Source: Octopus sinensis
Taxonomy: Eukaryota
Direction: 5' to 3'
Length of the DNA: 64,000 nt
Assembly (NCBI RefSeq): GCF_006345805.1
Contig: NC_042997.1
Coordinates: forward strand, 173,228,001 to 173,292,000
A program made the translations under genes and the position numbers. Shown here one piece after another: positions 27,866-52,919 of this stretch (within the stretch, counting starts at the first letter, position 1; each line of letters opens with the position of its first letter). Below the pieces are notes generated by a model. It was not told the origin of the DNA and ran no database searches. It was given only the letters and a program-made list of their open reading frames with translations.

Positions 27866-28249
27866 TAAATTAGAGATAAAACCACTATTAGGCAAATCAA
27901 ACAGTGAAAATCATAAGCCAATACATATAATAATATATATACAAATAATGTATATATATATACACACACACACACATACACACACCCAAAAGATATATAC
28001 TCTCGGAGTGGTTGGCGTTAGGAAGGGCATCCAGCTGTAGAAACTCAGCCAGATCAGATTGGAGTCTGGTGCAGCCATCTGGTTCGCTAGTCCTCAGTCA
28101 AATCGTCCAGCCCATGCTAGCATGGAAAGCGGACGTTAAACGATGATGACGATGATTTACATAGCGTGCCACCAAGAAGATGTTAACATCTGATAACTCA
28201 ATTTTCACTTTATAGATTTACTAATTAGAAAGACTGAAATAAACCTGAC

Positions 28250-28682
28250 TAAGCTTTGAACAAAATGTTACTGGAAGTTTGAAAATGCAGTCAAAGCACA
28301 AAGACAGTTTAGGAGGGAAGTTTCAAACAGATCCACCTTCAGGATTTGAATTAAGAGATAAATATGAAGCAAGATGGAAATGTCCCAGAAGACGACATGC
28401 AAAAATACTAAAAAAAAAGTATAGCCAGTGTTCACAGAAATCTGTGCAGTCAAGTATGTTGTGAGATAAGAATCTCAAAATCAAGGGTTCATTGCATTTT
28501 GAAACATTGTCATTATGTTTCATTCCAAATAGTGCTTGCACTCAATGATGATGATCCAGACCAAAGGGTAGAGTTTTGGAAGTGGTACTTGGCAAGACAT
28601 GTAGAAGACGCATACTTTCCAACAAGGATTGCTTAGAGTGATGAGGCTACATTTGAATTAAATAACACAGTTAACTGCCACA
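28250..28682 (+). mobile_element. Decayed N-terminal half of a mariner-type transposase
   Basis: Peptides YWKFENAVKAQRQFRRE(fs)FQTDPP and [45 protein letters not shown], i.e. an HTH region plus the first catalytic (W)SDEA motif. Confidence 0.8.
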
Positions 28683-28724
28683 AAAAAAGTCATGGAGAAA
28701 AAAAAAAAAGAAACTAATCATATA

Positions 28725-29138
28725 GGCGCAGGAGTGGCTGTGTGGTAAGTAGCTTGCTTACCAACCACATGGTTCCGGGTTCAGTCCCACTGCATGGCAC
28801 ATTGGGCAAGTGTCTTCTACTATAGCCTCGGGCCAACCAAAGCCTTGTGAGTGGATTTGGTAGACGGAAACTGAAAGAAGCCCATCGTATATATGTATAT
28901 GTATATACATATATGAGTGTGTGAGTGTATGTTTGTGTGTCTGTGTTTGTCCCCCCAACATCGCTTGACAACCGATGCTGGTGTGTTTACGTCCCCCGTA
29001 ACTTAGTGGTACGGCAAAAGAGACCGATAGAATAAGTACTAGGCTTACAAAGAACAAGTCCTGGGGTCGATTTGCTCGACTAAAGGCGGTGCTCCAGCAT
29101 GGCCACAGTCAAATGACTGAAACAAATAAAAGAAAAGA
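28725..29138 (+). mobile_element. SINE family A, older subfamily, representative copy
   Basis: Same architecture with different diagnostic bases (CCAACATCGCTTGAC, AAAGCCTTGTG, GTAACTTAG). Related copies at ~155-500(-), 9630-9975(-), 14424-14830(+), 18812-19194(+), 26715-27050(-), 41000-41358(-), 47695-48113(+), 50135-50487(-), 60612-60965(-), 61653-62125(+). Confidence 0.88.
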
Positions 29139-29159
29139 ATATTCCATGAAGAAAATGAC

Positions 29160-30320
29160 TTGCTAATGACCAGCATGGTCATCAACTAGGAAGAAGCAGC
29201 TTTACACAGCTCCTACAACACAATGATTGGATGTTAAAACAGTTGCTCGCCCTTTAAAATAGCAATATATCAATATATCTCAATTTTGTGAAAGCCTTTA
29301 ATAAAGTCAGTCACAGAATGATATCATAACCTGCATGATCTTGGCACAGTTGGAAAACTATATTAATGGCTACATGGCTTTTTAAAACAGATTCCTGACA
29401 GTTGTAACCAATGGGGCTATCTTCCATGAAACAATAATAATGATAGGAGCCCCGCAGAGTATGATCTTCAGGCCACTGCTAGTCAGTGACACTCATACAT
29501 GCCCTTAGTTATGCAGAGAGCAAAACTCACTAGATATGCACCACGAGGTACAAAAGTATCACAGATGATAGAGAACCTGGTAGATGCTATGCACCTGCAA
29601 CATGACTTACATCATACATATAAATAGGCTGAAGAAATTAAAATTCAATTTAATGCTGAAAAATTCTAAATCCTCAACTATCAGTAGACGAAATTCAATG
29701 CAATGCTGAGAAAATACTTTGGATCAGAAGAAATTGCAGCCCAAGAATCACAATCAGTATGTGACCCAGGTATTAATATAAGTAATGATGCTTCTTTTCA
29801 TGTGCAGATTAAGATGTCAATGAAATGTAGGTAGCTAGTCAGATAGATGCTAGGAACTTTTAGAACTCAAGGGCAGGAAACCATGATGGTCCTCTGGAGA
29901 ATATTTGTCCACAGCTATCTAGATTATTGTCCCCATTTGTGGTTCCCGTACAGTGTAAAATTACTGGGACTTAAAGCAATCCAAAACTACAAAAAAAAAA
30001 AAAATTGCCTTGGTGAAACAGATCAGCTACTGAGAAACCAAAGATGGAAAAAATATGCAGTAATGTATGGCTGGAAAATCCTAGAAGGATTTGCATCAAA
30101 CTTTGGTATTGAAAGCTATATTAACCCTCAAACAGAGCACCAGTGCAGAGTACCAAAGAGCCAATCCTTGCAATTGAGATCAAAAACCAGATATTGCATA
30201 AGCTTAGGAAAGACTGAACTGGTGTGTAGTTCAGGGAAGACTGCACTGGTATGGTCATGCGATGTGTATGGATGTGGACAGCTGCATAAAGAAGTGCTGA
30301 TCACTCAATACAGATGAAGC
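29160..30320 (+). mobile_element. Decayed CR1/L2-group LINE reverse-transcriptase fossil
   Basis: Peptides IYLNFVKAFNKVSH (cf. YLDFAKAFDKV.H), GAPQSMIFRPLL (cf. GVPQG.VLGPLL) and LDYCPHLWFP (cf. LDYCSQLWSP), with many stops. Confidence 0.8.
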
Positions 30321-31376
30321 TTATGGAAGAGGGTGACCCAAGTTAACATGGGATGCAGTTATGAAGGCTGATTACAGGTAACCTTGAACCTCACACAGAG
30401 ATAACAAGGTAGTGGGATGATTGGCAGTTCTCAAAAAGACCTGCCCAACTTGGAGGTGACTAACTTCTGAAAGTTCTGTGTGTGTGCATGTGTGTGTGTT
30501 TGTGTATACAGCTGCCCCTTCACCAAAATTTCCTCCTGAAGGTACCATTATCACCTTCCATTTCTCCAGCTGCAGCTTTTCTTTGGATACCATTAATCTT
30601 CCAAACTGCCCCAAACCGTTTCATGATATTCATCCCTCATTCTTAATACTGTCCTCACCATCCATATTTTACATTCCACCCCCCCAGCTATCAAATCATC
30701 TCACCCCAATCATCATTACTATTCTACTTTTACTATTCTTCATTACATTTGGTTACCCCTACGCCTTACCTACCGCAGCCTTATCCAATCTTCACCTACT
30801 CTTCCCTACTTCCCCTATTTAGATCTGCTCAATACTTGTTCTTAATTCATTATAGTTATTTACTGCCTCACTATTACCCATCTCTCACTTGTCCATTCTT
30901 GCAACCTCCATCCACCTATATTCTCTGTTATGTTACCATTCACTTCTACTCACAGATGCCTCATCACTACTATTTTCCACCTTCCTCCAGTCACTCCCTA
31001 CATTATATTCTAAAATGTGAGAAGCCATGTGGCTCCTCTACAACAAGAAACCTGTTCTGATCTGGTCCCTTCTCTCATACTTTAACTCTTTGTCTCCTAG
31101 CAGAAAATAAGGTCACTATCTCAGGGTTCATTGTTTTACAAGCTGTGTGGCAACCTTACAAATTCTGATAGCATGAGAAAAGCAGCCAGTACATACTGTA
31201 AATTGGTTGGTGTAGGAAAGGTACACAGCCATACAGACCATGCCAAAGTAAACAGTGGAGCATGATGCAGTTCTTGGACCCATGAGATCCTGCCAAATGA
31301 TCCATCCCATGCCAGCATGGGATAAAGGTATTAAATGATGATCATGATGATATATACATATGCATACATATACACG

Positions 31377-31412
<36 letters not shown>

Positions 31413-31833
31413 AACACACACACATGTACACATACACCTGTACATATATATATGCATATTATATACAGAATGATGATCCCTACATCTTTACAGGTATTAT
31501 CAATCTCAATCATATTTCACCTTGATCATCTCTATTACATCTCAGTGTGCTCTGAGATTACTCTTAAGACTTAACAGTTGACCTGATGTGCTTCAAGTAT
31601 GTATAATAGATTAGATTCAAAACATTTACAGGGTTTACACATAGCTTACGAAATTACATACAGTACAGTAATTTCGCGCAGGCTTACACAGCCAGTTCTT
31701 AATAGGAAATGTTGGTCACAAAGATTACATTTCCAACTCTATCTTATCAGGTGCATCCACAATACCTCCCTTTTTCAAAGTATGTTTCAACAGTGCATGC
31801 TACTCTTTGGCTAGCTCAAAGTGCACAATACCT

Positions 31834-32060
31834 ATTTCTTTAGCCACAAGGGGCTAAACACAGAGGGGACAAATAAGGACAGACAAACAGATTAAGTCGG
31901 TTATATCGGCCCCAGTGCGTAACTGGTACTTAATTTATCGACCCCGAAAAGATGAAAGGCAAAGTCAACCTCGGCGGAATTTGAAGTCAGAACGTAATGG
32001 CAGACAAAATACAGCTACGCATTTCGCCCGGCATGCTAACATTTCTGCCAGCTCGCCGCC
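31834..32060 (-). mobile_element. SINE family B (tRNA-type head, Meta/Sauria-like core) with a 16-bp TSD
   Basis: TSD AAAGTGCACAATACCT at 31818-31833 and 32061-32076. The family B-box is GAGTTCAAATTCC. Other copies at ~10010-10141, 16395-16763, 17310-18035, 19817-20040, 27133-27345, 35970-36115, 36420-36633, 37760-37925, 54720-54893, 57640-58335, 59490-59810. Confidence 0.9.
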
Positions 32061-32321
32061 AAAGTGCACAATACCTTCCTACAACAGAGAACTCCATCTA
32101 TTTCTATCACTACTTATTCCTCCCAGAACTGAAAATCTATTTTCATTTTCACTGAGTGGCTGCATTTGAATTTCAGCACACTTTTAGGTATCCTTTGTTG
32201 GGGGTAAACAGTAAAAGAAGGCACTCTAAAAACATGCATATATGGTCTACATCCAGTTGCTGTAGTTTCCACAGCCTGTCACTGCTTACTCAGATAAGAC
32301 AGACTGAATGTGTATATTACA

Positions 32322-32376
<55 letters not shown>

Positions 32377-34673: not shown

Positions 34674-37600
34674 AAAGATGAATGAGGAGCCAACCCTAAC
34701 ACAATACCCCAGGACATTTTTTGCAGAGGAACTAATGATTCTGCCAATAATAATGATAATTTCAATATTATCATCCTATATTATCATATCATTATTTAAT
34801 GTCTGTCTTGTGTGAGTATGTTTGTGTCTCCTTGTCTTGCCATATTGTTGCTTTAAATGACTGTTATTCATTTCCAATATTCTGGGAAAGCATATCTGCC
34901 CATGGGGAATTATTACTTTGCTTGGAAATGAGGTAGATGATTCAACAGGAAACTTTACAATATACTGATACTTTTCCGAAAACTAAGAGACAATATAAAT
35001 TTGCAACATGAAACTGAAACAAACCAGAACTGGGTCTAAATAGTTTTGACTCTTTCTTGTTTTCTGACAACAATTTTGCAGTTTAATAAACATAATTAAC
35101 AAAGTAATGCATACAAGAGAAATTTTTTGCAAGGGAAACAGATTTTTAAGTAGATGTGTGCATGTATATATAATTGAGAGAGAGTTAGCAAGTGAGTGAG
35201 TAGAGTGAGTAAGAATGTGTTTGTGTGGTATCTTATTTCACATAAAAAAAAATAATTTCAACAGTTAAGATTTAAACCAGGGTTGACAATGAATCGATAC
35301 CTTGATTTTCTTTGCTAATAAATGCTTTCATTTTCATACAAATCTCTGTCTGTTGTATGTGCATATTGGTTACACACATGGAAATAAGTTCCGAAAAACA
35401 AAGTATTCAAAGTGTGTATATTTGCACACACATTGATCCAAGTGGAAAGAAGGGGCAGAAGAGGAAAGAGATCAAGGGATAATATATGGAAGAAATAGGG
35501 GAAACTGGACCTCAAGAAGCTGAAACTTATGAAGCAGATGACATAAGCATCAATAATAGATGAGACTTTGTGTTAAAGACCAATTCAACACATATTACCA
35601 GAATAGAAAAACAGACTCATAAGTGTGTGCTGAACTGCACACAGCCAACTGGCTGCTATAGCAAAACAACGCTTCATACATACTCTGCAGAACAGAGAAA
35701 TCAGCTAACAACACCATTTGAAAATTTCCAGAAGGGACCTTAAAACCGAAATATTGACATTCAAGGTAAAAGTACAAACTATAGACCTGTATTATTTCTT
35801 ATAACTTGCACTGTTTTGGTTTTATAAATAAATATATTTGAAAACATATCTAATATATAAATGAGTGAAAGATGTGTATCAGATATATACAGCATATTGC
35901 ATTCAACATACACATATCTAAATTCATACACACACTTTGTGTGTAATTCTCTTTAAATCTTGAGTGCCCAAGTGGTACTTAATTTTATCGACCCTGAGAG
36001 AATGAAAGGCAAAGTCAACCTCTGTGGTATTTGAACTCGGAACGTAAAGGAATCGAAAGAAATGTCACTGAGCAGTTTGTCTAATATGCTAAAGATTTTG
36101 CCAGCTCACCATCCAGTCAATTCTTTGCAATTACATAGTAACCACCAATGAATAAAATTCTTATGCTACTAGCCCAGTAGATGATCAATTTTGACACTGT
36201 CAATAGTAGGATACACATGTATGGATTATATGAGAATAAAATTAAAGCGATTTTACTTGCAGTATAGTCATATGGTCATGTGTGTATATATATATACACA
36301 TATACACACACCTGTTTCACCTAGTCAATGCTATTTTTTTTTCATTCATTGATATGTATATGATGACAATCCTTTGACTTGTGTCATAGGTTTTTCAGTT
36401 CTCTCTCATATACTTCAATACCTATTTCTTTACTACCCACAAGGGGCTAAACACAGAGAGGACAAACAGATTAAGTCGATTATATCGACCCCAGTGCGTA
36501 ACTGGTACTCAATTAATCGACCCCCGAAAGAATGAAAGGCAAAGTCGACCTCGGCGGAATTTGAACTCAGAACGTAGCGGCAGACGAAATACGGCTACGC
36601 ATTTCGCCCGGCGTGCTAACGTTTCTGCCAGCTTGAGCTTAACCAGATTCATACATCTCAACAATGACTTTCACACACTTTTTAATTAATTACCCAATCA
36701 CAACAATGTGGATTAAGAAAAATTTAATTAGGTCAACCGCAGACTGGTGTAGTCAATAAAGAAAACAAAAAATAACACCTTGTGATTGTTTGATTCTCTA
36801 CAATCTATTGACGAATTTTTATCTATTACGAAAATTGCTTTATTGAAACATTTGTATTGCATAACAAAAATTAAATTAGATCGACAGTTTTAATTCTTTC
36901 AAATGGTGGCATAAGTTGTTTTGTAAACAAGAAGCTGACTACTGCTATTTTAAACAGTATAGAAATTGAACCATCCAGAATCACTTATTCATATCCAAAT
37001 CAAATGTTTACACTTTATCAACTCTTTCACTTTAAATGGAGAAAAAAAAACAAAAAAAAAAAAAAAAAAACATGCAATATATCAAATTTAAAATTATTTG
37101 CATATGCAATTAATTGGAACCATTCCTTCCGAGCACAAAACACATTGTAGACTTTCTTATCAGACAACAGATGGCGGGGGGGGGGGGGGATACAACTTCT
37201 TGTAGAACAACCTGTGCAGAGCATTTTTTTTTGTTTATAGTGATCAAATGTTTGTGTTGTACATTAAGCTCATGCCCTCCATCAAATTGACATTGCCTGT
37301 ACAAGCGCATGGTGTACCACACGTCAGATGTCAACGTGATTGTAAAGCAGAAGTATTTTATATATATATACATACATATATGTAGCCTTAAAGATATATG
37401 AGCATACACACACACATGCACATACACACACACACACACACACACATGCATTGTGTATATGAACAAAACAGACACAATTTGTAACTATTTCAGAATTATA
37501 AACAATATCTTTTATATCTTAAGAACTGTTTATCAGTCTTTGGCTTGCATCATATAATCATAGAGCAATGTCCTATATAATCAATATAGTCACTTACTTT

Positions 37601-39729
37601 GAGAGAAGAAACAGTCAATTTTACTAGTGTTTTACAGCTACTATATCAACCTTGGAAGGAAAACTATCATCTCTGCTTCATAAAGCATTATTATTATTAT
37701 TATTGTTGTTGTATAACCATACCAGCATGTAAATGGTTATAAAATGATGACAATGTTTGTTACTGAGCTGGCAGAACTGTTAGCTTGTTAGGCAAAATAC
37801 TTAACAGTATTTCTTCTGACTCTTTATATTCTGAGTTCAAATGCTGCCAAAGTCAACTTTGCTTTTCATTCTTTCAGGGTCGATAAAATAGCAGTTAAAT
37901 ACTGAAGTTGGTGTAATTGGCTACCCACTCCCACTAAAATTGCTGGTTGCTTGCCAAAAATTTACAACAAAAATTTATAACAATTATTATTATCTAAGAT
38001 AGGCACAAAGCCAACAGTTTGGTTAAAGAGGATTACTAGATCAAACAGACCTTAGTACTTGACTGGTACTTTTTTTATTGACCCTGGGAATATAAAAAGA
38101 CAAAAGTTGAACTCAGCAGGATTTGAACACAGGGTAGGAAAAAAGCCAAAACAAATTCCACAATAATAATAATTTATTTCCCACTTGAACGATAGATAAG
38201 GGGATAATGCAAGGACAAGCCCAATCATATAAATAAAAACAAAGAAAAGACAGAAAGAAGAGAGGAGGTTACCAAAGGCAACTCTTTCTAACACAACCGG
38301 GTTTGCACTAATTACAAGTCGTGTCCTTCAACCTACAAGTGTAGGATGAATGTAGTCTTTTTTCACCCAGATCATACTCTCACATATTTGAGTAAATGTA
38401 AGAGAAACCAACAATGATTTCCAACATTAGCATGAGGGCACATATTTGATGGACAGGGGAATACAGTAGAATGTGTAATGGTAATATTATCTATCTCTGG
38501 GGATAGCAAGATAGAAAGACCAATAGAGAAACAAGCACAAATTCTGAACAGAGGTTGTTCCATATTTTAATGACTCAGAGTGTGTAATAAAGCATGTTTT
38601 AATTTTTTTAATAATAGATATTTCTTTTCATAGCCAAGGGGCCCCAACACATTGGGAAAAATGCAAAAGTTGAATGCATGGGAGAACAATAAACAAGAGA
38701 AATTAGGATTTATAAGTAAAATAAAAAAAAATTTAATTTCAAAATACAAATACAAAGGATGGGGGGATAAGTTGATAAAAACTATAGAATTGAAATAGGG
38801 AAATAAAACCGCAGTATATTTCTGGTACCTATTTCCATACAGACCACGAGAACAGAGCATGCAGTTTCATAATCAGAATGGTTCATGACCACTAGTTAGT
38901 AAGCAATGTGGTAAAATGCCGCATAACTGAACATTGGTGATAAAAATCAAGATTTGTAACTACTTACTTTAATTCTACTACATGTATAAGGCCTCAGCTT
39001 AGAGCAATTTAATAAACTCTAATACCTCTATTGAGTAGCGCTCTAATACAATTGCAATCAGAGTGGTTGGCATTAGGAAGGGCATCCAGCTGTAGAAACT
39101 CTGCCAGATCAAGATTGAAGCATGGTGCAGCCATCTGGTTCACCAGACCTCAATCAAATCGCCCAACCCATGCTAGCATGGAAAGCAGACGTTAAACGAT
39201 GATGAAGATGATGATGTATGCACAAGCATATGAGAGAGAAAGATTATTGTATAAAGGTACATGTGAAATTAAAATCACCGAGAGTCATGCATGATGTGGG
39301 AAACAAGGGTGTGACTATGCAGCTTTATATGTCAACATTGATGTTGAAAAATCACCACGTGGAGCTTTTGACATCAACAACATACAATCACCTGTGTATA
39401 TTCATATAAAAAACATATGTGCAGTGCATGTATAGGTAACTTCCCCATTATTGACAGCCGATTTATATTTACTAAAAGCATAGTAAATAATCACATATTT
39501 ATATAAACATGTGTTGTGCATGTGCAAGTGTGGGTGAACCACAAATAAAATTTTGAAGGCTTCAGTTATGAAACCTTCATCAGAGAGTCAGAAGGCCACA
39601 TAACTGAAACTTCCAACTGTCAGCCATTATTTGTATAAATGAAATAAATATGTTATTCCACTGCTAAGTATTGAGCAATCCTTCAGTTCTAATGTTTATT
39701 TTTGTACACAAACATAAAAGTAAACATTA

Positions 39730-39790: not shown

Positions 39791-40970
39791 TGTGGTATGT
39801 CTCAATTTCGTGAAGGCTTTCCATAACCTTCATCACAGAACACATGCAAACAAGACATATATCACATAACTGGAAAACTGGGGGAATGTCTGCAGGACTT
39901 CTTAAAAGGTAGAGGGTGGAGAATCTCTCATAGTCTAAGGAATTACTCAAAGAAACTGTCTTATAGCTCATAGTGCCCCCAGCTGTAGAGAGAGCCCCCT
40001 TTACACTGGCTACGCTGATGATATAAAAGCATCACATGCAATGAAGAACTCTGATGATGATGATGCATACTTCCAACAAGACCTGAATACAATATATAAG
40101 TGAGCAGAGGACAGCAATATGCAATTTAATGCTGGAAAATTTCAAATGCACCAATTGTCAACTCACAAACACTAACACACTGCAACAAAGCTACACAGGA
40201 CTAGCAATGAGGTACTGCAGTGTCAGCGTTATAAGTACATAAGCTTGGAATCAATATGAATGATGATGCAACACTTCAAAGTGTATACAACTAAGATGGC
40301 TATGATGTGTAAGTAACTGGATGAGTGAATTTGGAGATCTTTCGGAGTAAGACACGAGGATCTCAAGATGGGGATGGGTGAGGTGGGGACAGTGTTGCTT
40401 TGTTATTTGGACTGTTGCTCCCAAATAATGCTCACCCACTGCATAGTGGCTAAATTAAAAGCAAAAATTCAAGCAACCATGTGCTGCTACACCAAATAGG
40501 TTGCCTCAATGCAACAAATGACCCACAAGGAAAGGCCAAAGAAACTAAAACTGCACTTCCTGGAGCAAAGGCAAGAAAGATATAGTGATGTGTATGTGTA
40601 AGATCCTTGAAGAGCTGGTAGCGAATTTCAGCATTAAGAGCTACACTGGTCCCCAAACTGGTTGCCACAGAATAGTGTCAAAAGTCCCGCATTTCCTACA
40701 TAGATCAAGATCCAAATACTACAATAAATAGCTAAGCATTTAAAGGCCCCACAGCTTTTCAATAACCTGCTGAAACATTATGGGACCATATGTAGGGTGG
40801 ATATTGATGTCTCTAAATGCACTTGGACACTCTACTAAGACCTTAGATGAACCTGCTTCACAACAAGAGACACAAATGAGAGCAGTGGTATCAAACTCTT
40901 TTATCCATCAAAAACCAATGTAACAATATTAATGGCAGCCCAGCATGGTCACAGACCACAAGATAGAACA
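39790..40970 (+). mobile_element. Second decayed CR1/L2-group LINE fossil
   Basis: Peptides VVYLNFVKAFHNLHH and FQQDLNTIYK*AEDSNMQFNAGKFQ. The 3' part resembles the 29.2-30.3 kb relic. Confidence 0.75.
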
Positions 40971-42059
40971 AATAAAAGTGTATATGCATATACATATATT
41001 CTTTTGTTTCAGTCATTTGACTGTGGCTATGCTGTAGCACAGCCTTTAGTTGAAGAAATCAACACCAGGACTTATTCTTTGTAAGCCTAGTACATATTCT
41101 ATCAGTCTCTTTTAACAAACTGCTAAGTTATGGGGATGCAAGTACACCAACATCAGTTGTCAAGTGATGGTGGGGGTACAAACACACACACACACACACA
41201 TATGTATATATGATGGGCTTCTTTCAGTTTCTGTCTACCAAAACCACTCACAAGGCTTTGGTTGGCCTGAGGCAATAGTAGAAAACTGTTGCCCAAGGTG
41301 CCACGTAGTGGGAATGAACCTCGAACCATGTGGTTAGTAAGCAAGCTACTTACCACACTATATATACAAATTATTTATAGAAACACATATGCTCCCGACC
41401 CCACAAACAAACACTTATTACAGAAAGTGGCAAGATCTTGGAAATGGAATAATCAGAGACCCAGGATGTGTAGCAGATAAGGAATAAGTGTATGATGATA
41501 CGTGAGTGAAAACAGGGTTTAGACAGGTGATACAAAAGGGGAGAGTAAAGGGTTCAATGTAACCTTCTGCATCAGATATGGGAAGGAGAGGTCAAGTGAA
41601 GATAGAGATTGGGGGTGGGGTATGGAAAGTACTTGGACCCCATACTAGTGAACAGTACAAATAGATGTTGATGAGAGGACCAAATAAGTACAGTCATACA
41701 CTGCGAGCAATGTATGGTGGGCAGAGGAGATCTGCCAACAGTGAAATTAGGAAGAGGAGAGAGTGACTAATTTGTGTGAGAGGAGTTATAGAGGCATGGG
41801 CACAGAAAGAATAAGGTAAAGATATGGGCAAAAAAAGAGACAAATGTGACAGTGAATGAGTGGTAAAGATGGGTGACAAGATGAAGAAGGGTAAGCGATA
41901 GAGTGATAGCAGAGAAGGGTAAGTAATGGGGAGTGACAGAGGAGAGGGTCATAGAGGTGTTAGGTGAGAGAAAGGCTGACAAAGAGGCCAATAATGTGAA
42001 TTTGACAGCATGCAGAGAAAGATAGAGAGACAAATGAGGGCATGGAGAAAGAAGATATG

Positions 42060-43990
42060 GAAACTATAAAAGATCCTGTAATGGGAAAAGATTTAGTGAA
42101 ATTTTAACTGATGCATATGACTGCGGGGAGTTAGATTTAGACACCTGTAATGTAGATGAAGGCTGAGAATTTTTAGAGTTCTGTCCAGGTCCACTGGATA
42201 GATATGTCGCTGGAGCAACAAAGCCAAAAGGAACATGGTGGAGGAACAATACAGTTAACAGGGCAGTGAAGACAAGGAAACAGGCATAGATAACCTAAGA
42301 GGAAGGTGGCTAGAAGAGCAGCTACGAAACAGGTATGAAGCAAAGAGGAAGGGATATGCATATGTCTTACATCATGAAGATCAGAGGTATTAAGTGTTCA
42401 GGATCTTAAGGTAGTGTATGAAAGAGAACAGAGAGGTCACAGGTGAGAAGTGTATTCAAAATGATGAAGGTATACTTGCCACTGATATGGATGATAAGAA
42501 AGTAGCATAGGAGTGCTATTATGAGAGGTTGTTTCATGTAAAGAATGCATGGGATGAAGAGAGGGTATCTTGTGATGACCCTACAGAGGGACCAGAAATT
42601 CAAGTTGACAGTAGTAAAGTAGATAAGGTGATCAAGGAGATAAAGATGAGAAAGCTGCAAGTTCCCTCTGGAATAGTTGTGGAGATGCTCAAAATATATG
42701 GTGAGTTAGGGTACATGATTACCACCCAGGTAGTAAATCAAGTTCTTCAAGAGTGATACCAAGTGACTGGCATAACAGTATCATTGTAAGCTGCTACAAA
42801 GACGAAGGAGATGCCTTAGACAGAAGCAGTTATATAGAATTAAATTACTGGATCAGGTCATGAAGGTCACAGAGAGGGTCATTGCACAATTGATTCATGA
42901 GAAGATGAGATGCAGAGGATCTAGATGAGTTGCGGTTTAATTTTGTGCCTGGAAGAGGTACTACAGATGCAACTACAAGAGAAATACTTGGCTAAGAATA
43001 AACCATTATTCCCGGCCGAAGAAAGCATTCAACAGGGTATCACATACAGTAATCTTGTGGTCACTTTGGTACTCTCAGAGAAATGACTGATATGCAGAAA
43101 AGGAGTATGTCTAACCCTTTAGCATTTAAACCGGTCATATCCGGCAAAAAGTATTCTGCCTGTTTTATGTTGAAATTGGCCAGATCTGGTCTCTCACACC
43201 AACCCTACAATATCGTTTTAAAAATTAACAGCTACCTCATCAAAATCTCATAGCTACAAGATAATGCATGATTAGTTCAAAACAATGTGAATAAAAAAGC
43301 ATTAACTTTGGCAGAATAATGTGAACACTAGAGGGCTAAACTCCATACACTGCATTTGCTATAAGCTATGGGCACACAATAGATGTAGTGAAATCACTGG
43401 TAGATGATTAGAGAACATAGGCCTCATATGTGATAGATGCACTGGAACAGTAAATTCCATGAACACACCAGAAATAGAACCCTTTGAATGCTTGGCTAGC
43501 TCTCTTGAAGTAGTTGATAGCTTTTGTTATCTAGGATCTGTCGTCATCAACAAGGAAGGTGGTTACTGTGAAAATATGGTTGGAAGAAGTTGAGGGAGCT
43601 ACAATTCAGTTGACAATAAAGGTCTTTTCCCAAAGAGTAAAGGCAGATTGTATGATATTTGTACTAGAATTGCCATGCTGTATGCTAGTGAAATATGGGC
43701 CTTCAATGCAGAGGACATGAGATGACTGGAAAGAAATGAAGCAAGCATGCTCTATTGAATGTACAGCAGTATAAATGTGCTGAGAGAAAGACTGGACGTA
43801 AGACTGGACGTAAGACTAATTACATGTACTATGAAACAAAAGAGACTGTTCTAGTGCAGACAACATATAATGTGTATAGATGAAAAGAGCTAATCACTAA
43901 ATGTGACTGGAAACCCAGGAAGATATATGATGAAGTGGTGAAGATTGACTTCAGGACCTTAAGCTTCACAGAGGAAACAACAAAGAACAA
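42060..43990 (+). mobile_element. Decayed RTE-clade LINE ORF2 fossil, interrupted by a piggyBac-like MITE
   Basis: Broken peptides include TWWRNNTVNRAV, EGPEIQVDSSKVDKVIKEIKMRK..PSGIVVEMLK, IPSDW..SIIVSCYK..GDALDRS, KLLDQVMKVTERVIAQLI, FVPGRGTTDA, VVDSFCYLGS and AMLYASEIW. There are many stops and frameshifts. Confidence 0.85.
43115..43335. mobile_element. Second copy of the piggyBac-like MITE, CTAA TSD
   Basis: Same length as and highly similar to 48375-48595. Flanked by CTAA on both sides. Confidence 0.85.
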
Positions 43991-44329: not shown

Positions 44330-45650
44330 ATACAAAGGTACTTTTTTACTAAGGTACTTTTGAAGACTGCAAGTAATTTCAATAGTGAAAACAGCATATG
44401 TTGCTGCCCACAGTTTCACATTCTAAGTTGTTAGCTGCATTGTGTGGCAGTGTACTGATGACTGAGCTTCACAAAAGTGACTACAGCAGCAGAACGGATA
44501 GTGCAAGTACCAGCGTCGCCTTAAAGAGCACCATCCGAGCGTGATCATTGCCAGAGCGGCCATCTGGCCTCCGTGCCAGTGGCACGTAAAAGACACCATT
44601 CGAGCATGATTGTTACCAGCATCGCCTTATTGGCACCTGAGCCGGTGGCATGTGTAAAAGATTTGAGCGAGGTCGTTGCTGGTACCACTTGACTGGCCCC
44701 GTGCCGGTGGCATGTAAAAGCACTCACTACACTCTCAGAGTGGTTGGTGTTAGGAAGGGCATCCAGTTGTAGAAACTCTGCCAGATCAAGATTGAAGCCT
44801 GGTGCAGCCATCTGGTTCGCCAGCCCTCAGTCATTCGTCCAACCCATGCTAGCATGGAAAGCGGATGTTAAACGATGATGATGATCTTCATGTCTAGAAA
44901 GTGTACTGCCAAAGTGTACTGAATAAATATGATGGGCTTCCACATAGTTCCCATCTACCAAATTCACTCACAAGGCAAGGCATATATTTTGTGGGTAGTC
45001 ACTGACTTCCACAGCATCGAAGATTTCATCTGATGACACCCTTATTTTGGAATTTCAGGTAACTTCCTTTAATATACCTTACACATTTCAAATAGCAACA
45101 TAGTATGGCCTTGGGTATTCTAATGTCCATCACATGAACTGTGCGTCTCACACAGCACAGCAGCTACTCTACTGTAATATTTGCATATTGCAGGAGAAAC
45201 TGATTGGTAATGTGGTCTTGCTTAGAATATTCATTAGAGATCAAAAGTTGTACAACTGACAGTTCACCAGCTTTGTGCTTCAATGTTTTTACTAATCAAT
45301 CACTGAACATAATAAAAAATGCCACTGCTGTATCTAGGTTGTTGACATTCCTATTAAGATGGTCAGCAACTTATAGTATGCGACTCCAGGTAAAAGTTGA
45401 TACAAAACTTCAGTTACTTTTTACATTGATTGAGAGAGATCGAGTACTGTTGGCACACAGCAAAATTTTCTGGCTCTTTTGCAGAGAGTAACCTACCTAA
45501 GCTGACTCAGTCAGTTCATGGATATACATATCACAACACTTTCTAGGGAATCTTAGCTTCAATAGTTTTAATAGCCCACCACCACTTATTGAGCAGTCCA
45601 TACACTCCAGCTAAAAGCTCATTTGCTGTGTTTTGTAGCCAAGATTAATG
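44330..45650 (-). mobile_element. Possible highly decayed hAT (Buster/Charlie-like) transposase relic, interrupted by SINEs
   Basis: Scattered minus-strand peptides in the expected order: YINLGY, VGYSLQKSQK, CVRYI, DEIFDAVE, SVHCHT (CxxH-like). The similarity is weak and judged by eye. Confidence 0.35.
44480..44886 (+). mobile_element. Repeat family C with an RTE-like 3' end and (GAT)n tail, representative copy
   Basis: GGAGTGGTTGGCGTTAGGAAGGGCATCCAGCTGTAGAAAC...CCCATGCTAGCATGGAAAGCGGACGTTAAACGATGATG. Longer copies carry internal GCCGGTGGCACGTAAAAG subrepeats. Also at ~2041-2203, 27999-28157, 39060-39215, 46997-47540. Confidence 0.85.
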
Positions 45651-45940
45651 TAATGTTCTAATCAAGTACACAGTACTGCTTTACCTGAGCAACATGAAGA
45701 GGGTGAGCTGTCAATCCTAAGAGAAACTATGGCAGTCATATCAAAGGGTTGCTGCTTTGAGCAGGGTTCACAAACCTGCTCTTCACAAACTGCTGAGTAT
45801 CTGCATAGAGTCAATGAGCACGACAAACAAAGGAATTTGAAGTTCAATAGTCTTTATATGAATAGGAGTGATGTCATAGGTGCTCCAAAAACAGAATCCA
45901 CACTAATTTACATGTAGAATTTCAGATTATTCTTATTACA

Positions 45941-46161
45941 AGGTGGTTACTGTGAAAATATGGTTGGAAGAAGTTAAGGGAGCTACAATTCAGTTGACAA
46001 TAAAGGTCTTTTCCCAAAGAGTAAAGGCAGATTGTATGATATTTGTACTAGAATTGCCATGCTGTATGCTAGTGAAATATGGGCCTTCAATGCAGAGGAC
46101 ATGAGATGACTGGAAAGAAATGAAGCAAGCATGCTCTATTGAATGTACAGCAGTATAAATG
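45941..46161 (+). repeat. Dispersed 221-bp copy of 43557-43777
   Basis: Hand alignment finds a single substitution (AAGTTGAGGG vs AAGTTAAGGG). Confidence 0.92.
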
Positions 46162-47556
46162 CAACCAGTAGCTGAGATACAAGAAAATCCTACACTATCA
46201 TTGACTGAAGGGACACTAATTTCAAGTAGTATTCCTTCAGCCAGACACTCAACCAATTCCTTCCTATTTTACAAGTTATTTTACATGCTCAGAGAGCAGA
46301 CTTACAGTACATATTGTTTCAACAGGGATATAAACATGACAATACACACATATACAACAATAACAGAATATATATATATATATACACACACACACATGTG
46401 TTTGTGTGAATATTATTTATATATATATAACCATTTTTGTCTTTTAATGTCTTCAGAAAATGACACATGCCCAAGATGCCATAAAGCAGAATCAAAACCA
46501 GGAATTACAGAGCAAGTTTCTTAAACATTTGGCTATCCAACTACTACACAGTATAAATAAATGGACTCTGAATGGGAGCCTGTCAGCTGTTGTATTATGC
46601 CCGAGACTGAAAGGGCCATGCTTCTCACAAACTGCTAAATTGATTCCGCGGGAAATTTACTTTAAGGGTACAGTGTCTAGCTAAATCAATGGGCCTGTCA
46701 GATCAGTTGGCACAAACTGACCACACATGGCAAGAAATTGGGAACATGATCCATTTCATACAGGCATATATATTTTCTATGGTTGCATGCCCTTCCTGTG
46801 CAAAGCCCACATTTGTTTCCGAGCAAGGTAATATTTTTCAATGACCAGACAAATTTTCCCAGAAGATGGAAAATAGATGGCACTGCTTATATGATTTACA
46901 ATTATTACAATGTCAAAACTAAGAAGCACAACAAAGACATATACACAACTATATGTATCTATATATATCGTAAGCTTCACAGCCACACACACACACATTA
47001 GGAAGGGCATCCAGCTGTAGAAACACTGCCAGATCTGACTGGCCTGGTGCAGCCTTCGGGCTTGCCAGACCCCAGTTGAACCGTCCAACCCATGCTAGCA
47101 TGGAAAGCGGACGTTAAATGATGATGATGATGATGATGATGATACACCATATGAGTACCATACGAGTGAGATCGTTGCCTGAGCAACAAACTGGCCTTCG
47201 TGCCGGTGGCATGTTAAGCACACCATTCGAGCATGATCATTACCGCGTCGCCTTACTAGCACTTGTGCTGGTGGCACATGAAACATTCAAGCGAGGACGT
47301 CGCCAGTGCCGCTGGACTGGCTTCTGTGCAGGTGGCACGTAAAAAGCACCATTTGGACGTGGCTGTTGCCAGTACCACCAAACTAGCCCTCGTGCCGGTG
47401 GCACGTAAAAGCACCCACTACATTGTCGGAGTGGTTGGCGTTAGGAAGGGCATCCAGCTGTAGAAACTCTGCCAGATCAGATTGGAGTCTGGTTCGCCAG
47501 TCCTCAGTCAAACCGTCAAACCCATGAGAGCATGGAAAGCGGGCGTTAAACAATGA

Positions 47557-47619
<63 letters not shown>

Positions 47620-48116
47620 TAGATAGATAAATTATTGAGGTGGCTATTCATGATTTACAACCTAAAGGCAACAAATATAGTTGTCACTAGAGTGATGTAG
47701 GTGTGGTTGTGTGGTAAGAAGCTTTCTTCCCAACCACATGATCTGGGGTTCAGTCCCACTGTGTGAAACCTTGGGGCAAGTGTCTTCTATTATAAGCCTT
47801 GTAAGTGGATGTGGTAGACAGAAGCTGCAAAGCCTGTCGTGTATCATCATCATCATCATCGTTTAACGTCCGCTTTCCATGCTATATATATTTATTTATG
47901 TGTATGTCTTCTTGTTTATCCTCCATCACTGCTTAACAACCAGTACTGACGTGTTTACATCCCCATAACTTAGTGGTTCAGCAAAAGAGACCAATAAAAT
48001 AAATACCAGGCTTTAAAACAAAAATGTACTGGGGGTCAATACATTCGATTAAAAATTGTTCAAGATAGTGCTCCAGCATGGCTGCAGTCTATAATGACTG
48101 AGACAAGCAAAAGATT

Positions 48117-48156
<40 letters not shown>

Positions 48157-48374
48157 GAGTGACCAAGGGATAGCACCTTGAAAGTTCCCTCAAAGGCACA
48201 ACACTGGGAAAGGTTCTTTGGGATGTCCAACAGTCACCTATGCCTATTCAGACACACCTATTCATGTTGTCCAAGGAAAAGGCTAAGACCGTTACAGCTT
48301 GGCACCAGTGATTTCTCAACTCATTTTTGCAGGTGAGTGAACATGATCAATGTCAAATAAAGTGTCATGCTTAA

Positions 48375-48595
48375 CCCTTTAGCATTTAAACCGGCCATAT
48401 CCGGCCAGAAGTATTCTGTCTGTTTTATGTTCAAACTGGCTAGATCTGGTCTCTCACACCAATCCTACAATATCGTTTTAAAAATTAACAGCTACCTCAT
48501 CAAAATCTCATAGCTACAAGATAATGCCTGATTAGTTCAAGGCAATGTGGATGAAAAAGCATTAATTTTGGTAGAATAATGCGAACAGTAAAGGG
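48375..48595. mobile_element. piggyBac-like MITE, 221 bp, TTAA TSD
   Basis: Termini are CCCTTTA...TAAAGGG. TTAA lies at 48371-48374 and 48596-48599. Confidence 0.85.
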
Positions 48596-51500
48596 TTAAG
48601 AACACAACATACCATCTGGTCCAGGAATCAATCTCATAACCTCATCATCATAAGCCTGATGTTCTTACTGAGCCATGTGCCTTCACTCTCACACACTATA
48701 TATATATATATATATAAGTAAAATGATCAAAGGACTCTCCCAGCCAAGGCTCCCGATGCTGGGTACATGGACTCCAAGTAATATATATGACCACCCCCTG
48801 GATGACGCACCAGTCCAAAGCAAAAGTATTTTTGTCAGATGAGTGGACTACAGGAACATGAAATGAAGTGTTTTGCTCAAGAAGACAACACATTCCCAGG
48901 TACACAAACTGAAACCACAATCTTAGGATTACGAGTACGACAACTTAACGACTAGATAATTAGTCTCCATTATACTATATTTACTAAACGTGAATATGCA
49001 TACACAAAACACAGTGTATATTTATCAGCATAAATATATAAACATACATTTTATGGAGTAATGTTTGTTTTTATACTGAAGTATAATTAAAAACAGTTTA
49101 ACATAAAACTGGAGAAATACTCAATACTTCTCATAGTGAACACATGTATTATACATTTACAGGAAGAGATGTGACAGTGACTTCCAAGTTTCATCCTGCT
49201 TGCTTTTCTCAGACAGTCTCACGAAGGTGAGCAGGATGAAACAATTATACTTGTAAGATATATATATATGTACATATATGTATACATACATATCCATGTA
49301 TCCATTACATATATAAATATATAGACCCATCCATCCATATATTCGTACACACACACACACACACACATATATGCTTATATATATATATGCATATAAATAT
49401 TTATATATGTATATATACATACAAAAAAAAATATATATATATATACACATACATATGTGTGTATATATATATATATATAGATAGATTTAGATAATCATAT
49501 CAGGAGGTGTTATTAAGTTAGACATGGCCTGGACCAATCTTTTGTCGAAACATATCTAAGTTTATATATATATATATACACACACATATATAGATATATA
49601 AACACTTTAAAAAAATGTTTCAGCCCAAAAGCTGCGGCCATGCTGGGGCACCCCCGTTGAATGTGCTACACTAGTACGTGAAACCACCTCTGATACGTGG
49701 CACTTGGTCAACAAGGGAGTTCGACGCCACTACCCGCATCTGTGTTTCCTGCCGAAAGGTAGGTTCAACTGGAACCCCTGACAAGAAGAGATCCAGTTAA
49801 GTTTTAAACCATTATCTGTGTGGATGTGTAAATCTACACATTTGCTTATAATATACTAACCCAAAAATAGCATAACTTTATAGTTAAATTTTGTAAAGAA
49901 ATCACTCCCCAGCTCACATTCTCGAAGACAAGTAGAACAAATTTGTTTTTTGCAAAATAAATGAGGGTTAATAAGAGAAAGTGCAACCATTGTACACCAA
50001 TGACTGAATCATCCAAATCTTAAAACAGAAAAATAAATGTAAAAATGATCAAACCAAAACACACACACTCACACACATCGAGGTTCAAACTATTAATACA
50101 CACACACACACATTTTTCTTTTCTTAAACAATTTTATTTGTTTCAGTCATGTGACCATAGCCATGCTTGACCACCGCCTTTAGTTGAACAAATCAACTTA
50201 TTCTATATAAGCCTAGTACTTATCCTATCGATGCCTTTTCTGAAACTGCTAAGTTACGGGGATGTAAACACACCAACATCGGTTATCAAGCGATGGAGAG
50301 GGGGACAAAGTCACCCACAAATATATATGATGGGCTTCTTTCAGTTTCCGTCTACCAGATCCACTCAAGGCTTCGGTCAGCCCGAGGCTATAGTAGAAGA
50401 CACCTGCCCAATGTGATACGCAGTGGGACTGAACCCAGAACCATGTGGTTGGGAAGTAAGTTTCTTCTCACACAGCCACCCTTGCAGCTATGTATATGTA
50501 TGATATTTATGACTGTTTACATATACAGACCAGATTGTGTGCATGTGCATGTGTGTGTGTATGCACTCGCGTTCCAACTATGTGTTTGTGTAAATATATA
50601 TATATTCATATGCATTTAGACATATACCTATCTAATGATTAGGTTGTATTTACTATCTTCCTATACATATACGTTTATATCATTTACATAGTGAACATGT
50701 TATAATATTTACCTTATAAAATGTGTACATACACATGATATATTCACAATGCATGTGCTCATATGATGTATTGGCAGCATATATTGTGTTCTGTGAGATA
50801 TATCGCAGTATATATTGAGTTCTGTACATATATTTGAAGAGTACCATGTACATTTAACATATACAAGTAGTCTACAATATACTGTGTCAATATGTATTAT
50901 ATTTGCAGTACACTTAATTGCACATACATTTATATGCACGTACATATATAAAACCACACACATATATACATAATGGTGTGTTGATGCTTATGTGTAGGCA
51001 TGCTTTTATACCAGTAAGTATATTGGCCTGTATAAATGCATGTGTGCACATGTGCATGTACTGCTGTTCCGATCATATACGTCTCATATAAACTGCTTTC
51101 CCACTAACCGAACAAAGGTGCTATCTCTTTACCGCAGCCAAAGTGGCTTTTTTTTTCCTTCCTTTTATCCAGCTTCCAGACTATTCCTTTCAAAATATTC
51201 CCCGTTTCACTCTCTGATTTACAATATATAGACCTCATTTTTCTATTACCAGGAATAGATTTTCAGCCCCATGACATGCCTGATTTAGCAAAGCTATGGT
51301 AACAAAAGGCATTGCAGCCATGACCATTCCGAATATATTTTTACTCTATATGATCTGATAGAGTGCTTCATTCTCCAAGACAGTGGACTATGTTTTGACA
51401 ATAGTTGGTTGTAGTTTCTAGGACATGTATAACACTGACTTTAAAGAACCTTTGGTTCCAATGCCTTTCTGGTTAACTGACTCTTCCTAATCAACCAAGT

Positions 51501-52110
51501 ATTAAATTTACTCCAATAATTAAATGAAATACAAGTATGCATTAGTATAATGTTGGGAAGGAGATCCAGCTCATCCAAATGTAGAAACCTTTACAAAGCA
51601 AACGCTGAAGCACAATGCAATCCTTGGGTCCATCAGCTCCTGTCCAACCATCCAACCCATGTCAGCAGGGAACATGGACGTCAAAATAACGATGATGATA
51701 CAAGTTTTTAATACTGTACTGTGTAAGGTACTGCAAAACAGGGTCACCCAGTAAACTAGCCTGGTGGTTGTGGGATTTTCAAAGTTCCTTCTTGTAAATT
51801 ATACAAGATGGTTTACAGCGGCTCCAGACCAACAATGTCCAGAAAGTTGGTGCTGCACCTGCATATTGAGTGAGCTTATACAGAAAACGTACATCAAGTG
51901 CATGAGTTTCACTGAACCTTCTTTTAATTGGACAGTGGATAGACAAAACAGCAAGACATGTCATTTTTGATAAACAAAATAAAAGTTGTTAAGCTGTGTG
52001 CTATCACTATTAAGATTTGTGTGTTTGAATGTATTTATATATTAATAATATATTTGTGCATAAGCTTGTGTGTGTGTGTACATGAATATATACCCACAAT
52101 ACATTTTAAC

Positions 52111-52150
<40 letters not shown>

Positions 52151-52919
52151 AAGACAACGTAAATATATGGATATTTCTCTATATATATACACAAATATAT
52201 ATACTTAGAATGTGTATATACTCACATAATTTTGTGTGTGTGTGTGTGTATATGTGTAAATATGTAGATAATTCACCCACATAATTACATTCACACATAT
52301 CCATGCATATGTATACACATCAATACACACACACACACATATATATATATATTGTACACAATTTCTCATTCTATCAATCTATCTTTTTATGTGTGTGTAT
52401 ACATACGTGTAAGTACAAATAAATACACATATACGAAGGTCTCTCAACAATATGGTCTCGATATCATTTCGTGGTACATGTGATGTATACATTGGTACCT
52501 AAAACAATTAGCAAAACCAGCACATTCTCGCTAAGTGTTTCAGGTGCCTATTCAGAAATATGCACGTTCTTGGCACTCCTATCCACGACCTAATAATGCA
52601 ACATGTGACTGTTAGGTGTAGAGAGGGTTTACAGCAAGTTGGCTGGTATTTTCAGTAGCCGATAAAAGTGCCATGCTCAAGTAGAAGAACACGTACCACC
52701 TGTAAAAGGAAGTGAACACATGGCCATATGATCGGGAGCCCAATATGTGTGTATAAGTTTATACACAGACAGGGTGAGAGAGGTCGATATTTTGATACAT
52801 ACGTATATGTAACAATATACATATAGTTTTGACTTTAAGAGTCCCTCATTGCGTGTGGCATTTATGTATAGTAATGCCCTCTATATAATATAATATAATA
52901 TAATATAATATATATATAC

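What the first reader, a model, noticed from the sequence alone, without database searches (positions are those of the whole stretch)
28200..52300. ~24-kb CpG-decayed domain: likely footprint of a germline-methylated gene body
Seen: a hand count gives 2 CpG in 32401-33000 versus 23 CpG in 5041-5640. Repeats inside the domain show systematic CpG>TpG/CpA change. The TSD-intact SINE B at 31834-32060 has GTCAAC, CGGCATGC, AACATTT, AGACAAAAT, ATACAGCTA and AAACAGATT, mostly where the copy at 19817-20040 (outside) keeps CG. SINE A at 41000-41358 has lost nearly all its CpGs. Established: molluscan 5mC is concentrated in transcribed gene bodies, and methyl-C deaminates to T. Inference: a long, stably expressed gene, or one large intron, spans this block even though no ORF is visible, and the SINEs act as internal methylation clocks.
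Basis: partly seen in the sequence, partly recalled or inferred. Interest (0 to 1): 0.7.

Follow-up and report, generated by a model that had tools for sequence, protein, structure and literature searches.

The report
CpG-depleted block, footprint of germline methylation
A sharply bounded 24-kb stretch has lost about four fifths of its CpG sites, the usual mark of long-term germline DNA methylation in a patchily methylated invertebrate genome, but no gene could be found inside it.

Summary
An unsupervised two-changepoint fit puts the block at 28201-52400. CpG observed/expected (o/e) is 0.31 inside and 0.89 outside. In non-repeat DNA it is 0.20 inside and 0.87 outside. G+C content and GpC are unchanged. 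TpG and CpA are raised.

SINE copies inside and outside have similar non-CpG divergence (medians 0.087 and 0.072, p=0.6). Copies inside lose ancestral CpGs 3.3 times faster per unit of divergence (0 of 2000 permutations reach this). So decay happened in place and is specific to CpG. Germline 5mC is by far the best explanation.

Two parts of the finding are weaker.
- The highlighted SINE B (31.8 kb) has lost 7 of 19 CpGs, and the outside copy it was compared with has lost 6 of 18. It therefore discriminates nothing.
- The "gene body" claim has no sequence support. Homology searches with the filtered ORFs of both strands, two Pfam scans, Rfam and a splice-site scan found no exon or RNA gene, only LINE, SINE and mariner debris.

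The gene-body reading rests only on the general rule for molluscs, and the taxon itself was not verified here. The kind of feature is ordinary and already known. The missing gene is a mild curiosity.

The parts
28201..52400 (.). CpG-depleted domain. CpG o/e is 0.31 overall and 0.20 in non-repeat DNA.
   Evidence: Changepoint fit, HMM, masked o/e, dinucleotide table.
48001..52400 (.). Right-hand shore of the domain, less deeply decayed. Non-repeat o/e is 0.34-0.38, against 0.12-0.28 further left.
   Evidence: 2-kb masked bins. SINE A 50132-50491 is only 56% decayed at divergence 0.143.
28003..28156 (+). Young SINE-like family C copy at the left boundary, just outside the domain. All 5 consensus CpGs are kept.
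28697..29142 (+). Young SINE A copy inside the domain. Non-CpG divergence is 0.029 and 5 of 19 CpGs are already lost, against 5-12% lost in outside copies of the same age.
31832..32059 (-). SINE B with an intact 15-bp target-site duplication (31817-31831 and 32060-32074). It has lost 7 of 19 CpGs, which is no more than outside copies. Sense strand inferred from a B-box-like motif on the reverse complement.
36416..36633 (-). Young SINE B copy that keeps 14 of 16 CpGs. It causes the o/e bump at 36-37 kb.
37765..37890 (+). Old SINE B fragment with 1 of 13 CpGs left at non-CpG divergence 0.103.
41003..41358 (-). SINE A copy with 1 of 18 CpGs left at non-CpG divergence 0.100. The outside copy 18810-19187 has the same divergence and keeps 17 of 19.
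47699..48114 (+). SINE A copy with 2 of 16 CpGs left at divergence 0.166.
50132..50491 (-). SINE A copy with 8 of 18 CpGs left at divergence 0.143, in the shallower right-hand part of the domain.
44526..44893 (+). Family C SINE-like insertion that still carries CpGs. It causes a local o/e bump.
46996..47561 (+). Composite family C insertion (two or more units, G+C 0.50-0.56, 27 CpGs). It forms the 'high' island at 47101-47600.
29847..30314 (+). Decayed LINE reverse-transcriptase C-terminal fragment, recognised by eye. Pfam did not recognise it.
39939..40728 (+). Decayed LINE RT fragments (a YADD-motif piece and a C-terminal piece), recognised by eye.
41927..43590 (+). Frameshifted LINE RT remnant spread over several frames, recognised by eye.
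28412..28633 (+). Fragment of a mariner/Tc1-like transposase, recognised by eye.
1..1200 (.). Second low-CpG state, cut off by the window start. It includes SINE A 187-464 with 1 of 16 CpGs left.

Best explanation
Bases 28.2-52.4 kb are a domain that has been heavily CpG-methylated in the germ line for a long time. It sits in an otherwise unmethylated, transposon-rich stretch of a mosaic-methylated invertebrate genome.

Mechanism:
- 5-methylcytosine deaminates to thymine, so CpG turns into TpG or CpA on either strand several times faster than other sites change.
- Unique DNA in the block has reached a near-equilibrium CpG o/e of about 0.2.
- Each transposon that lands in the block starts CpG-rich and then decays at the raised rate. 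The remaining CpGs therefore sit mostly in the youngest SINEs.

Shown here: the depletion, its specificity to CpG, its sharp limits, and the raised CpG decay rate at matched age.

Inferred: that methylation is the cause. I put this at about 0.85-0.9.

Inferred only from the general rule for such genomes: that the domain marks a transcription unit. I put this at about 0.5-0.6. If it does, the unit is most likely non-coding, lineage-specific or built of very small exons, because no recognisable coding exon is present.
For: - Block limits and strength.
- CG stands out among the 16 dinucleotides (ratio 0.23) while TG and CA rise (CT and AG rise too). G+C and GpC are equal inside and outside.
- Rate test on 13 inside and 31 outside SINE copies. 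CpG loss per unit of non-CpG divergence is 9.9 inside and 3.0 outside. Family A gives 10.5 against 2.5 and family B gives 10.8 against 3.8. LRT p=3e-14, and 0 of 2000 permutations reach the observed ratio. Non-CpG divergence is not different (p=0.60).
- A SINE with an intact target-site duplication lies in the block, so the repeats are ordinary in-place insertions and their CpG loss came after insertion.
- 128 of the 250 remaining CpGs lie in the 21% of the block made of recognisable repeats.
- The same SINE families occur inside and outside, so it is one genome and not a chimera.
- Background: in Octopus bimaculoides fewer than 10% of CpGs are methylated. [quoted passage not shown]
Against: - No methylation or expression data could be consulted.
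- No exon was found. The filtered non-repeat ORFs of at least 28 aa on both strands had no homologue. There were no Pfam hits and no Rfam hits. Splice-site and ORF candidates are not enriched.
- Methylated genes in such genomes are typically conserved housekeeping genes, whose exons should have been found.
- TG and CA excesses are symmetrical (1.40 and 1.43), so there is no transcription-strand signal.
- Two young SINEs inside (36416-36633 and 31832-2059 region, i.e. 31832-32059) are no more decayed than outside copies.
- The organism was not identified with the tools.
Confidence: 0.6

Rival explanations
1. The domain is germline-methylated but is not a gene body. Methylation would be aimed at, or spread from, something else, for example an old LINE-rich patch, a small-RNA-guided silenced region or a heterochromatic island.
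For: - No exon or RNA gene was found.
- At least three, and probably five, LINE fragments lie in the block, all on the + strand. I recognised only two RT pieces in the 40 kb of flanks.
- The octopus paper notes that intergenic repeats are somewhat more methylated than repeat-free intergenic DNA.
Against: - Unique DNA is more depleted (0.20) than the repeats (0.54).
- Depletion is continuous over 24 kb, not centred on the LINE pieces.
- In octopus, 5mC does not decorate transposons (PMC9476566).
Confidence: 0.25
2. Age effect: the block is simply older DNA with older repeats, while the flanks are full of young CpG-rich insertions.
For: - Repeat cover is lower inside (21%) than outside (31%).
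- Several inside copies are old.
Against: - Non-CpG divergence of inside and outside copies does not differ (medians 0.087 and 0.072, p=0.60).
- At matched divergence, inside copies keep far fewer CpGs. At about 0.10 divergence the figures are 1 of 18 inside and 17 of 19 outside.
- Non-repeat flank DNA has o/e 0.87.
Confidence: 0.03
3. A regional mutation or composition regime unrelated to methylation, such as an isochore, biased gene conversion or a replication-timing effect.
For: None specific. AG and CT are also about 1.2-1.3-fold higher inside.
Against: - G+C is equal inside and outside (0.358 and 0.344).
- GpC o/e is 1.00 and 0.96.
- Only CG falls strongly, and its deamination products rise.
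Confidence: 0.03
4. The block decayed elsewhere and was moved here as a segment (segmental translocation or a giant transposon), or it is an assembly join.
For: The left edge is very sharp and lies next to a microsatellite and a young SINE.
Against: - The right edge is graded over about 4 kb and more.
- No terminal repeats were found at the two edges.
- SINE copies inside, the oldest nearly CpG-free, show that decay ran on long after they inserted in the block.
- The same SINE families occur on both sides.
- The only assembly gap is at 62676-62775.
Confidence: 0.04

Closest known systems
Low-CpG (historically germline-methylated) gene-body domains of mosaic-methylated invertebrates: Ciona, oyster, sea anemone, honeybee and octopus (PMC9476566; the others from my own knowledge of Suzuki 2007, Zemach 2010, Gavery & Roberts 2010)
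   Same: - Strong CpG-specific depletion with TpG/CpA excess.
- Kilobase-scale domain with sharp limits.
- Flanks near o/e 1.
- Transposons inside share the state of the domain instead of being targeted themselves.
   Different: - No exon, conserved coding sequence or RNA gene could be found in the domain.
- Typical members are conserved housekeeping genes.
- Methylation and transcription were not measured.
CpG decay of Alu and other SINE copies used as a methylation-dependent clock in mammals (own knowledge, e.g. Xing et al. 2004)
   Same: - Ancestral CpGs of dated SINE copies are lost several-fold faster than other sites.
- The ratio of CpG to non-CpG divergence reads out methylation history.
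   Different: - Here the clock runs at two speeds within one 64-kb window (about 10 against about 3), because methylation is mosaic and not global.
- The consensus was built from only 6-23 copies per family.
Vertebrate bulk genome (global methylation, CpG o/e about 0.2)
   Same: The equilibrium CpG o/e of unique DNA in the block (0.17-0.20) is at the vertebrate level.
   Different: - It is confined to 24 kb.
- The neighbouring 27 kb and 11 kb are near o/e 0.9, which does not occur over such spans in vertebrates outside CpG islands.

Membership tests
Germline-methylated domain (CpG-decay footprint) | CpG o/e strongly depressed relative to the flanks, with defined limits | tested here: met
   0.31 against 0.89, and 0.20 against 0.87 in non-repeat DNA. 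Limits at 28201 and 52400.
Germline-methylated domain (CpG-decay footprint) | Reciprocal excess of TpG and CpA, with GpC and G+C unaffected | tested here: met
   TG 1.40 and CA 1.43 inside, against 1.18 and 1.19 outside. GC 1.00 against 0.96. G+C 0.358 against 0.344.
Germline-methylated domain (CpG-decay footprint) | CpG-specific rate rise at matched neutral divergence, measured on dated interspersed repeats | tested here: met
   CpG loss per unit of non-CpG divergence is 9.9 inside and 3.0 outside. 0 of 2000 permutations reach this. Non-CpG divergence is equal.
Germline-methylated domain (CpG-decay footprint) | 5-methylcytosine actually present in germ cells | not testable with these tools
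Methylated gene body of a mosaic-methylated invertebrate | Domain covers the same span as a transcription unit (exons, splice junctions, transcript) | tested here: inconclusive
   - No homologue for the filtered non-repeat ORFs of at least 28 aa on either strand.
- Pfam 0. Rfam 0.
- No excess of splice-flanked ORFs.
- Non-coding, lineage-specific or very short exons cannot be excluded, and no RNA data are available.
Methylated gene body of a mosaic-methylated invertebrate | Host genome is of the mosaic, gene-body-methylating type (for example a mollusc) | tested here: inconclusive
   - The bimodal CpG landscape within the window fits.
- The taxon was not identified. RT homologues are unnamed ENA, NCBI or JGI contigs, and a 50-kb relative lacks these SINEs.
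Methylated gene body of a mosaic-methylated invertebrate | Strand asymmetry or TE orientation bias expected of a transcribed unit | tested here: not met
   - CpG-to-TG and CpG-to-CA changes on the + strand number about 35 and 34 in inside SINEs (my tally).
- TG and CA o/e are 1.40 and 1.43.
- The A>T skew is only slightly higher inside (0.108 against 0.06-0.07).
Isochore / compositional domain | A shift in G+C content and in many dinucleotides | tested here: not met
   G+C is equal, and CG is the only dinucleotide that changes strongly.

The most novel reading that the evidence does not exclude
The block is an 'orphan' methylated domain. It would be a 24-kb island of vertebrate-level, long-standing germline CpG methylation with no protein-coding gene, in a genome where methylation is thought to be confined to the bodies of expressed genes. 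It would mark either an unannotated long non-coding transcription unit or a methylation target class not yet described in molluscs.
Probability: 0.2. Interest if true: 0.5.

Novelty: already known. Interest (0 to 1): 0.25.

Why it matters
The kind of feature is textbook. Mosaic invertebrate genomes carry low-CpG domains where the germ line is methylated, and CpG o/e has been used as a proxy for this for nearly twenty years.

The case is useful in three ways.
- It is a clean, quantified example. One window shows two CpG clocks running at about 10 and about 3 times the background rate.
- It shows that a raw-sequence reader can locate such a domain to within 100-200 bases.
- If methylome and transcript data later show a methylated domain with no coding gene, the locus would be a handle on what recruits methylation in molluscs apart from coding-gene transcription.

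Tried and rejected
2. Pfam on four concatenated sets of ORFs of at least 38 aa from 26-42 kb gave 0 families. Ten single ORFs gave only noise at E of about 0.1. Even the by-eye mariner and LINE pieces were not recognised, so Pfam is insensitive here.
3. Exact look-up of ORF 29847-30317 found nothing on record.
It was split by strand, and both halves gave no hit at E<=1e-3.
5. Rfam at gathering thresholds over the whole window gave 0 hits. ARAGORN gave 0 tRNAs.
6. The third homology search, with the intact RT ORF 15178-15702, was meant to identify the organism. It gave 244 hits, all unnamed. Contig look-ups gave GCA_024449705.1 and an ENA contig without organism names. Literature searches for the accession and for SINE strings found nothing.
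7. The 50-kb ENA relative lacks SINE families A, B and C, so it is another species and useless as a same-genome control.
8. A PWM splice-site, ORF and composition scan found very few candidates. They are not enriched in the block, and the top ones are TE-derived.
9. ORFs in the flanks (24.5-28 kb and 52.5-56.5 kb) were inspected for a first or last exon. Nothing looked protein-like.
10. The representative-library search refuses concatenated ORFs and was not used.
11. I looked for terminal inverted or direct repeats at the two edges, as a giant transposon would have. None were found beyond ordinary SINE pairs.
12. I considered and rejected RIP-like repeat-targeted mutation. Unique DNA is hit harder than repeats, and TpA is not raised.


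Full report
OBSERVATION

The window is 37% G+C with an overall CpG observed/expected (o/e) of 0.67.

- Per-kilobase o/e is about 0.7-1.27 from 1.2 to 28 kb. It drops to 0.10-0.57 from 28 to 52 kb, with one exception of 0.83 at 36-37 kb. It returns to 0.64-1.2 from 52 kb onward.
The o/e is 0.31 inside and 0.89 outside, with a log-likelihood gain of 146.
- One-kb bins inside and outside differ with Mann-Whitney p=5e-10.
- A two-state HMM gives the same block. It is broken only by three 200-500-bp 'high' islands, each of which is a young SINE insertion. The HMM also calls bases 1-1200 'low', so a second such domain is cut by the window start.

SPECIFICITY

- After masking everything that matches elsewhere in the window, unique DNA has o/e 0.20 inside and 0.87 outside, at the same G+C (0.358 and 0.344).
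- Among the 16 dinucleotides CG stands out by far (inside/outside ratio 0.23). TG and CA rise 1.2-fold and GC is flat. CT and AG also rise 1.2-1.3-fold, possibly because there is less TA/AT microsatellite inside (my guess).
- Half of the 250 CpGs left in the block lie in the 21% of it made of recognisable repeats.
- The left edge is abrupt. Masked 2-kb bins go from 0.96 to 0.17, right after a CpG-intact family C SINE at 28003-28156.
- The right edge is graded: 0.17, then 0.34-0.38 over 48-52 kb, then 0.8-0.65 beyond.

THE CLOCK TEST

- I grouped self-matches into three SINE-like families: A (382 bp, 19 ancestral CpGs), B (233 bp, 19 CpGs) and C (136 bp, 5 CpGs).
- I aligned the copies, built CpG-aware consensuses, and scored CpG retention and non-CpG mismatch for each copy.
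- Thirteen copies inside keep 65 of 151 ancestral CpGs at a pooled non-CpG divergence of 0.099. Thirty-one copies outside keep 323 of 422 at 0.086.
- I modelled retention as exp(-k*d). The rate of CpG loss per unit of non-CpG divergence is 9.9 inside and 3.0 outside (LRT p=3e-14).
- The ratio of 3.3 was reached by 0 of 2000 shuffles of copy labels. It is the same in family A (10.5 against 2.5) and family B (10.8 against 3.8). Non-CpG divergences do not differ (p=0.60).
- Matched pairs make the point directly. SINE A 41003-41358 (divergence 0.100) keeps 1 of 18 CpGs. The outside copy 18810-19187 (divergence 0.108) keeps 17 of 19.
- The copy in the left-edge low domain (187-464) keeps 1 of 16.

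The age explanation is therefore refuted, and decay happened after insertion, in place.

- The target-site duplication is real: AAAGTGCACAATACC on both sides.
- All six quoted strings are present. Five of them lie where copy 19813-20043 has CG.
- The outside copy has lost other CpGs that the inside copy keeps. The totals are 7 of 19 lost inside and 6 of 18 lost outside.
- One 'decayed' site (AAACAGATT) is shared with the other inside copy, 36416-36633, and may be a subfamily variant.
- Copy 36416-36633 keeps 14 of 16 CpGs.

Young SINE B copies have therefore had too little time to show the effect. The older B fragments do show it: 37765-37890 keeps 1 of 13 and 35963-36050 keeps 2 of 7.

IS THERE A GENE?

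This is the inferential half of the finding, and I could not support it.

- By eye, the ORFs of the block are LINE reverse-transcriptase debris, all on the + strand (29847-30314, 39939-40728, 41.9-43.6 kb). There is also a mariner-like fragment (28412-28633), plus microsatellite or polypyrimidine read-through.
- Pfam found nothing in concatenated ORFs of at least 38 aa from 26-42 kb, nor in ten single candidates. It also missed the obvious TE pieces, so this negative is weak.
- The stronger test used the filtered ORFs of 28.0-52.6 kb: non-repeat, not low-complexity, at least 28 aa, with a composition score above -0.12 per residue, and omitting the + strand LINE intervals. They were joined with X spacers and searched against 5.8 billion proteins. 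The minus strand (3742 aa) and the plus strand (4780 aa) both gave no hit at E<=1e-3. A 40-residue exon of a conserved protein, or any annotated protein of this locus held in that database, should have scored.
- Rfam at gathering thresholds found nothing in the whole window, and ARAGORN found no tRNA.
- A simple scan for acceptor and donor sites with an open frame between them and protein-like composition found 2.5 candidates per 10 kb in the block and 3.0 in the left flank. The best ones are TE-derived.
- The flanks hold no protein-like ORF that could be a first or last exon.
- Strand signals are absent. CpG-to-TG and CpG-to-CA changes on the + strand number about 35 and 34 in inside SINEs (my tally). 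TG and CA o/e are 1.40 and 1.43. A>T skew is only slightly raised (0.108 against 0.06-0.07).

WHAT IT MOST LIKELY IS

- CpG-specific, domain-limited, in-place acceleration of CpG-to-TpG/CpA change is the signature of germline 5-methylcytosine. I know of no other process that produces it. I put this at 0.85-0.9.
- The o/e of about 0.17-0.20 in unique DNA is near the vertebrate equilibrium. That implies heavy methylation maintained over a long time.
- The 26% loss in a SINE A copy of divergence 0.029, against 5-12% outside, suggests methylation continued until recently.
- Whether the domain is a gene body rests on background knowledge. In Octopus bimaculoides fewer than 10% of CpGs are methylated. 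They cluster on the bodies of a set of highly and broadly expressed genes, and transposons are not targeted (PMC9476566). Other mosaic invertebrates behave alike (my own knowledge).
- Against that prior stands the lack of any recognisable exon, although methylated genes are usually conserved. I put 'transcription unit' at about 0.5-0.6. If it is one, I expect a non-coding, lineage-specific or tiny-exon gene.
- The main rival, at about 0.25, is a methylated domain not tied to a coding gene.
- Age, composition regime, translocation and chimera together get less than 0.1, for the reasons given under the rivals.

CAVEATS

- The organism was not verified. The RT ORF at 15178-15702 has 244 homologues, but all are unnamed contigs (best identity 91%). 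Literature look-ups failed. The sequence looks octopus-like to me, with abundant tRNA-type SINEs, TA and AC microsatellites and 37% G+C, but that is recall and not a test.
- The SINE consensuses come from 6-23 copies within one window. Subfamily structure can inflate 'divergence' for young copies.
- The homology searches skip ORFs under 28 aa, ORFs of unusual composition, and the + strand LINE intervals.

COMPARISON AND NOVELTY

- The feature is a standard low-CpG domain of a mosaic-methylated invertebrate genome.
- Using SINEs as CpG clocks has precedent in Alu studies (my own knowledge).
- Nothing here departs from the known kind, except that the expected gene is not visible.
- I score interest at 0.25. 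The most novel reading not excluded, an orphan gene-less methylated domain, gets probability 0.2 and interest 0.5 if true.

Noticed in passing
window 1-1200: A second low-CpG state, cut off by the window start (o/e 0.18). SINE A copy 187-464 there keeps only 1 of 16 ancestral CpGs. It is probably the edge of another methylated domain.
   Followed up: partly
window 56579-57315: Four head-to-tail 184-bp units derived from SINE B, about 93% alike. A SINE has been turned into a short tandem array, and it is CpG-rich.
   Followed up: no
window 10142-11152: Very AT-rich satellite-like array (G+C about 0.18) with nested periods of 70, 137 and 269 bp.
   Followed up: no
window 8654-9073: A 420-bp (ATG/ATA)n trinucleotide array that reads as long poly-Asn/Asp, poly-Met/Ile and poly-His/Tyr pseudo-ORFs.
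   Followed up: no
window 43556-43777 and 45940-46161; 43107-43339 and 48367-48599: Inside the decayed block there is a 222-bp direct repeat that is 99.5% identical, 2.4 kb apart. It is nested within a 233-bp pair that is 91% identical, 5.3 kb apart. Both overlap LINE RT debris. The cause could be recent local duplication or several copies of one LINE, and this was not resolved.
   Followed up: partly
SINE A/B/C copies outside 28.2-52.4 kb: At ancestral CpG sites, outside copies show TG:CA of 49:19 in consensus orientation, while inside copies show 29:40. The outside asymmetry may reflect subfamily variants or changes made before insertion. It is unexplained.
   Followed up: no
window 26267-26653 (+): A 129-aa open frame that reads like the C-terminal part of a mariner/Tc1-type transposase (QDGAPPH...RSPDLTP motif, recognised by eye). 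Pfam gave no hit.
   Followed up: partly
window 15178-15702 (+), also 57873-58121: An intact 175-aa LINE RT C-terminal ORF with 244 homologues (best 91% identity), all on unnamed metagenome or draft-genome contigs. A second fragment of the same family lies at 57.9 kb.
   Followed up: partly
window 63485-63999 and 62676-62775: A G+C-rich (0.49) segment at the window end is open in several frames on both strands, with no Rfam match. A 100-N assembly gap lies just upstream.
   Followed up: no
window 14753-15086: A 167-bp tandem duplication (89% alike) of the 3' part of a SINE A copy.
   Followed up: no
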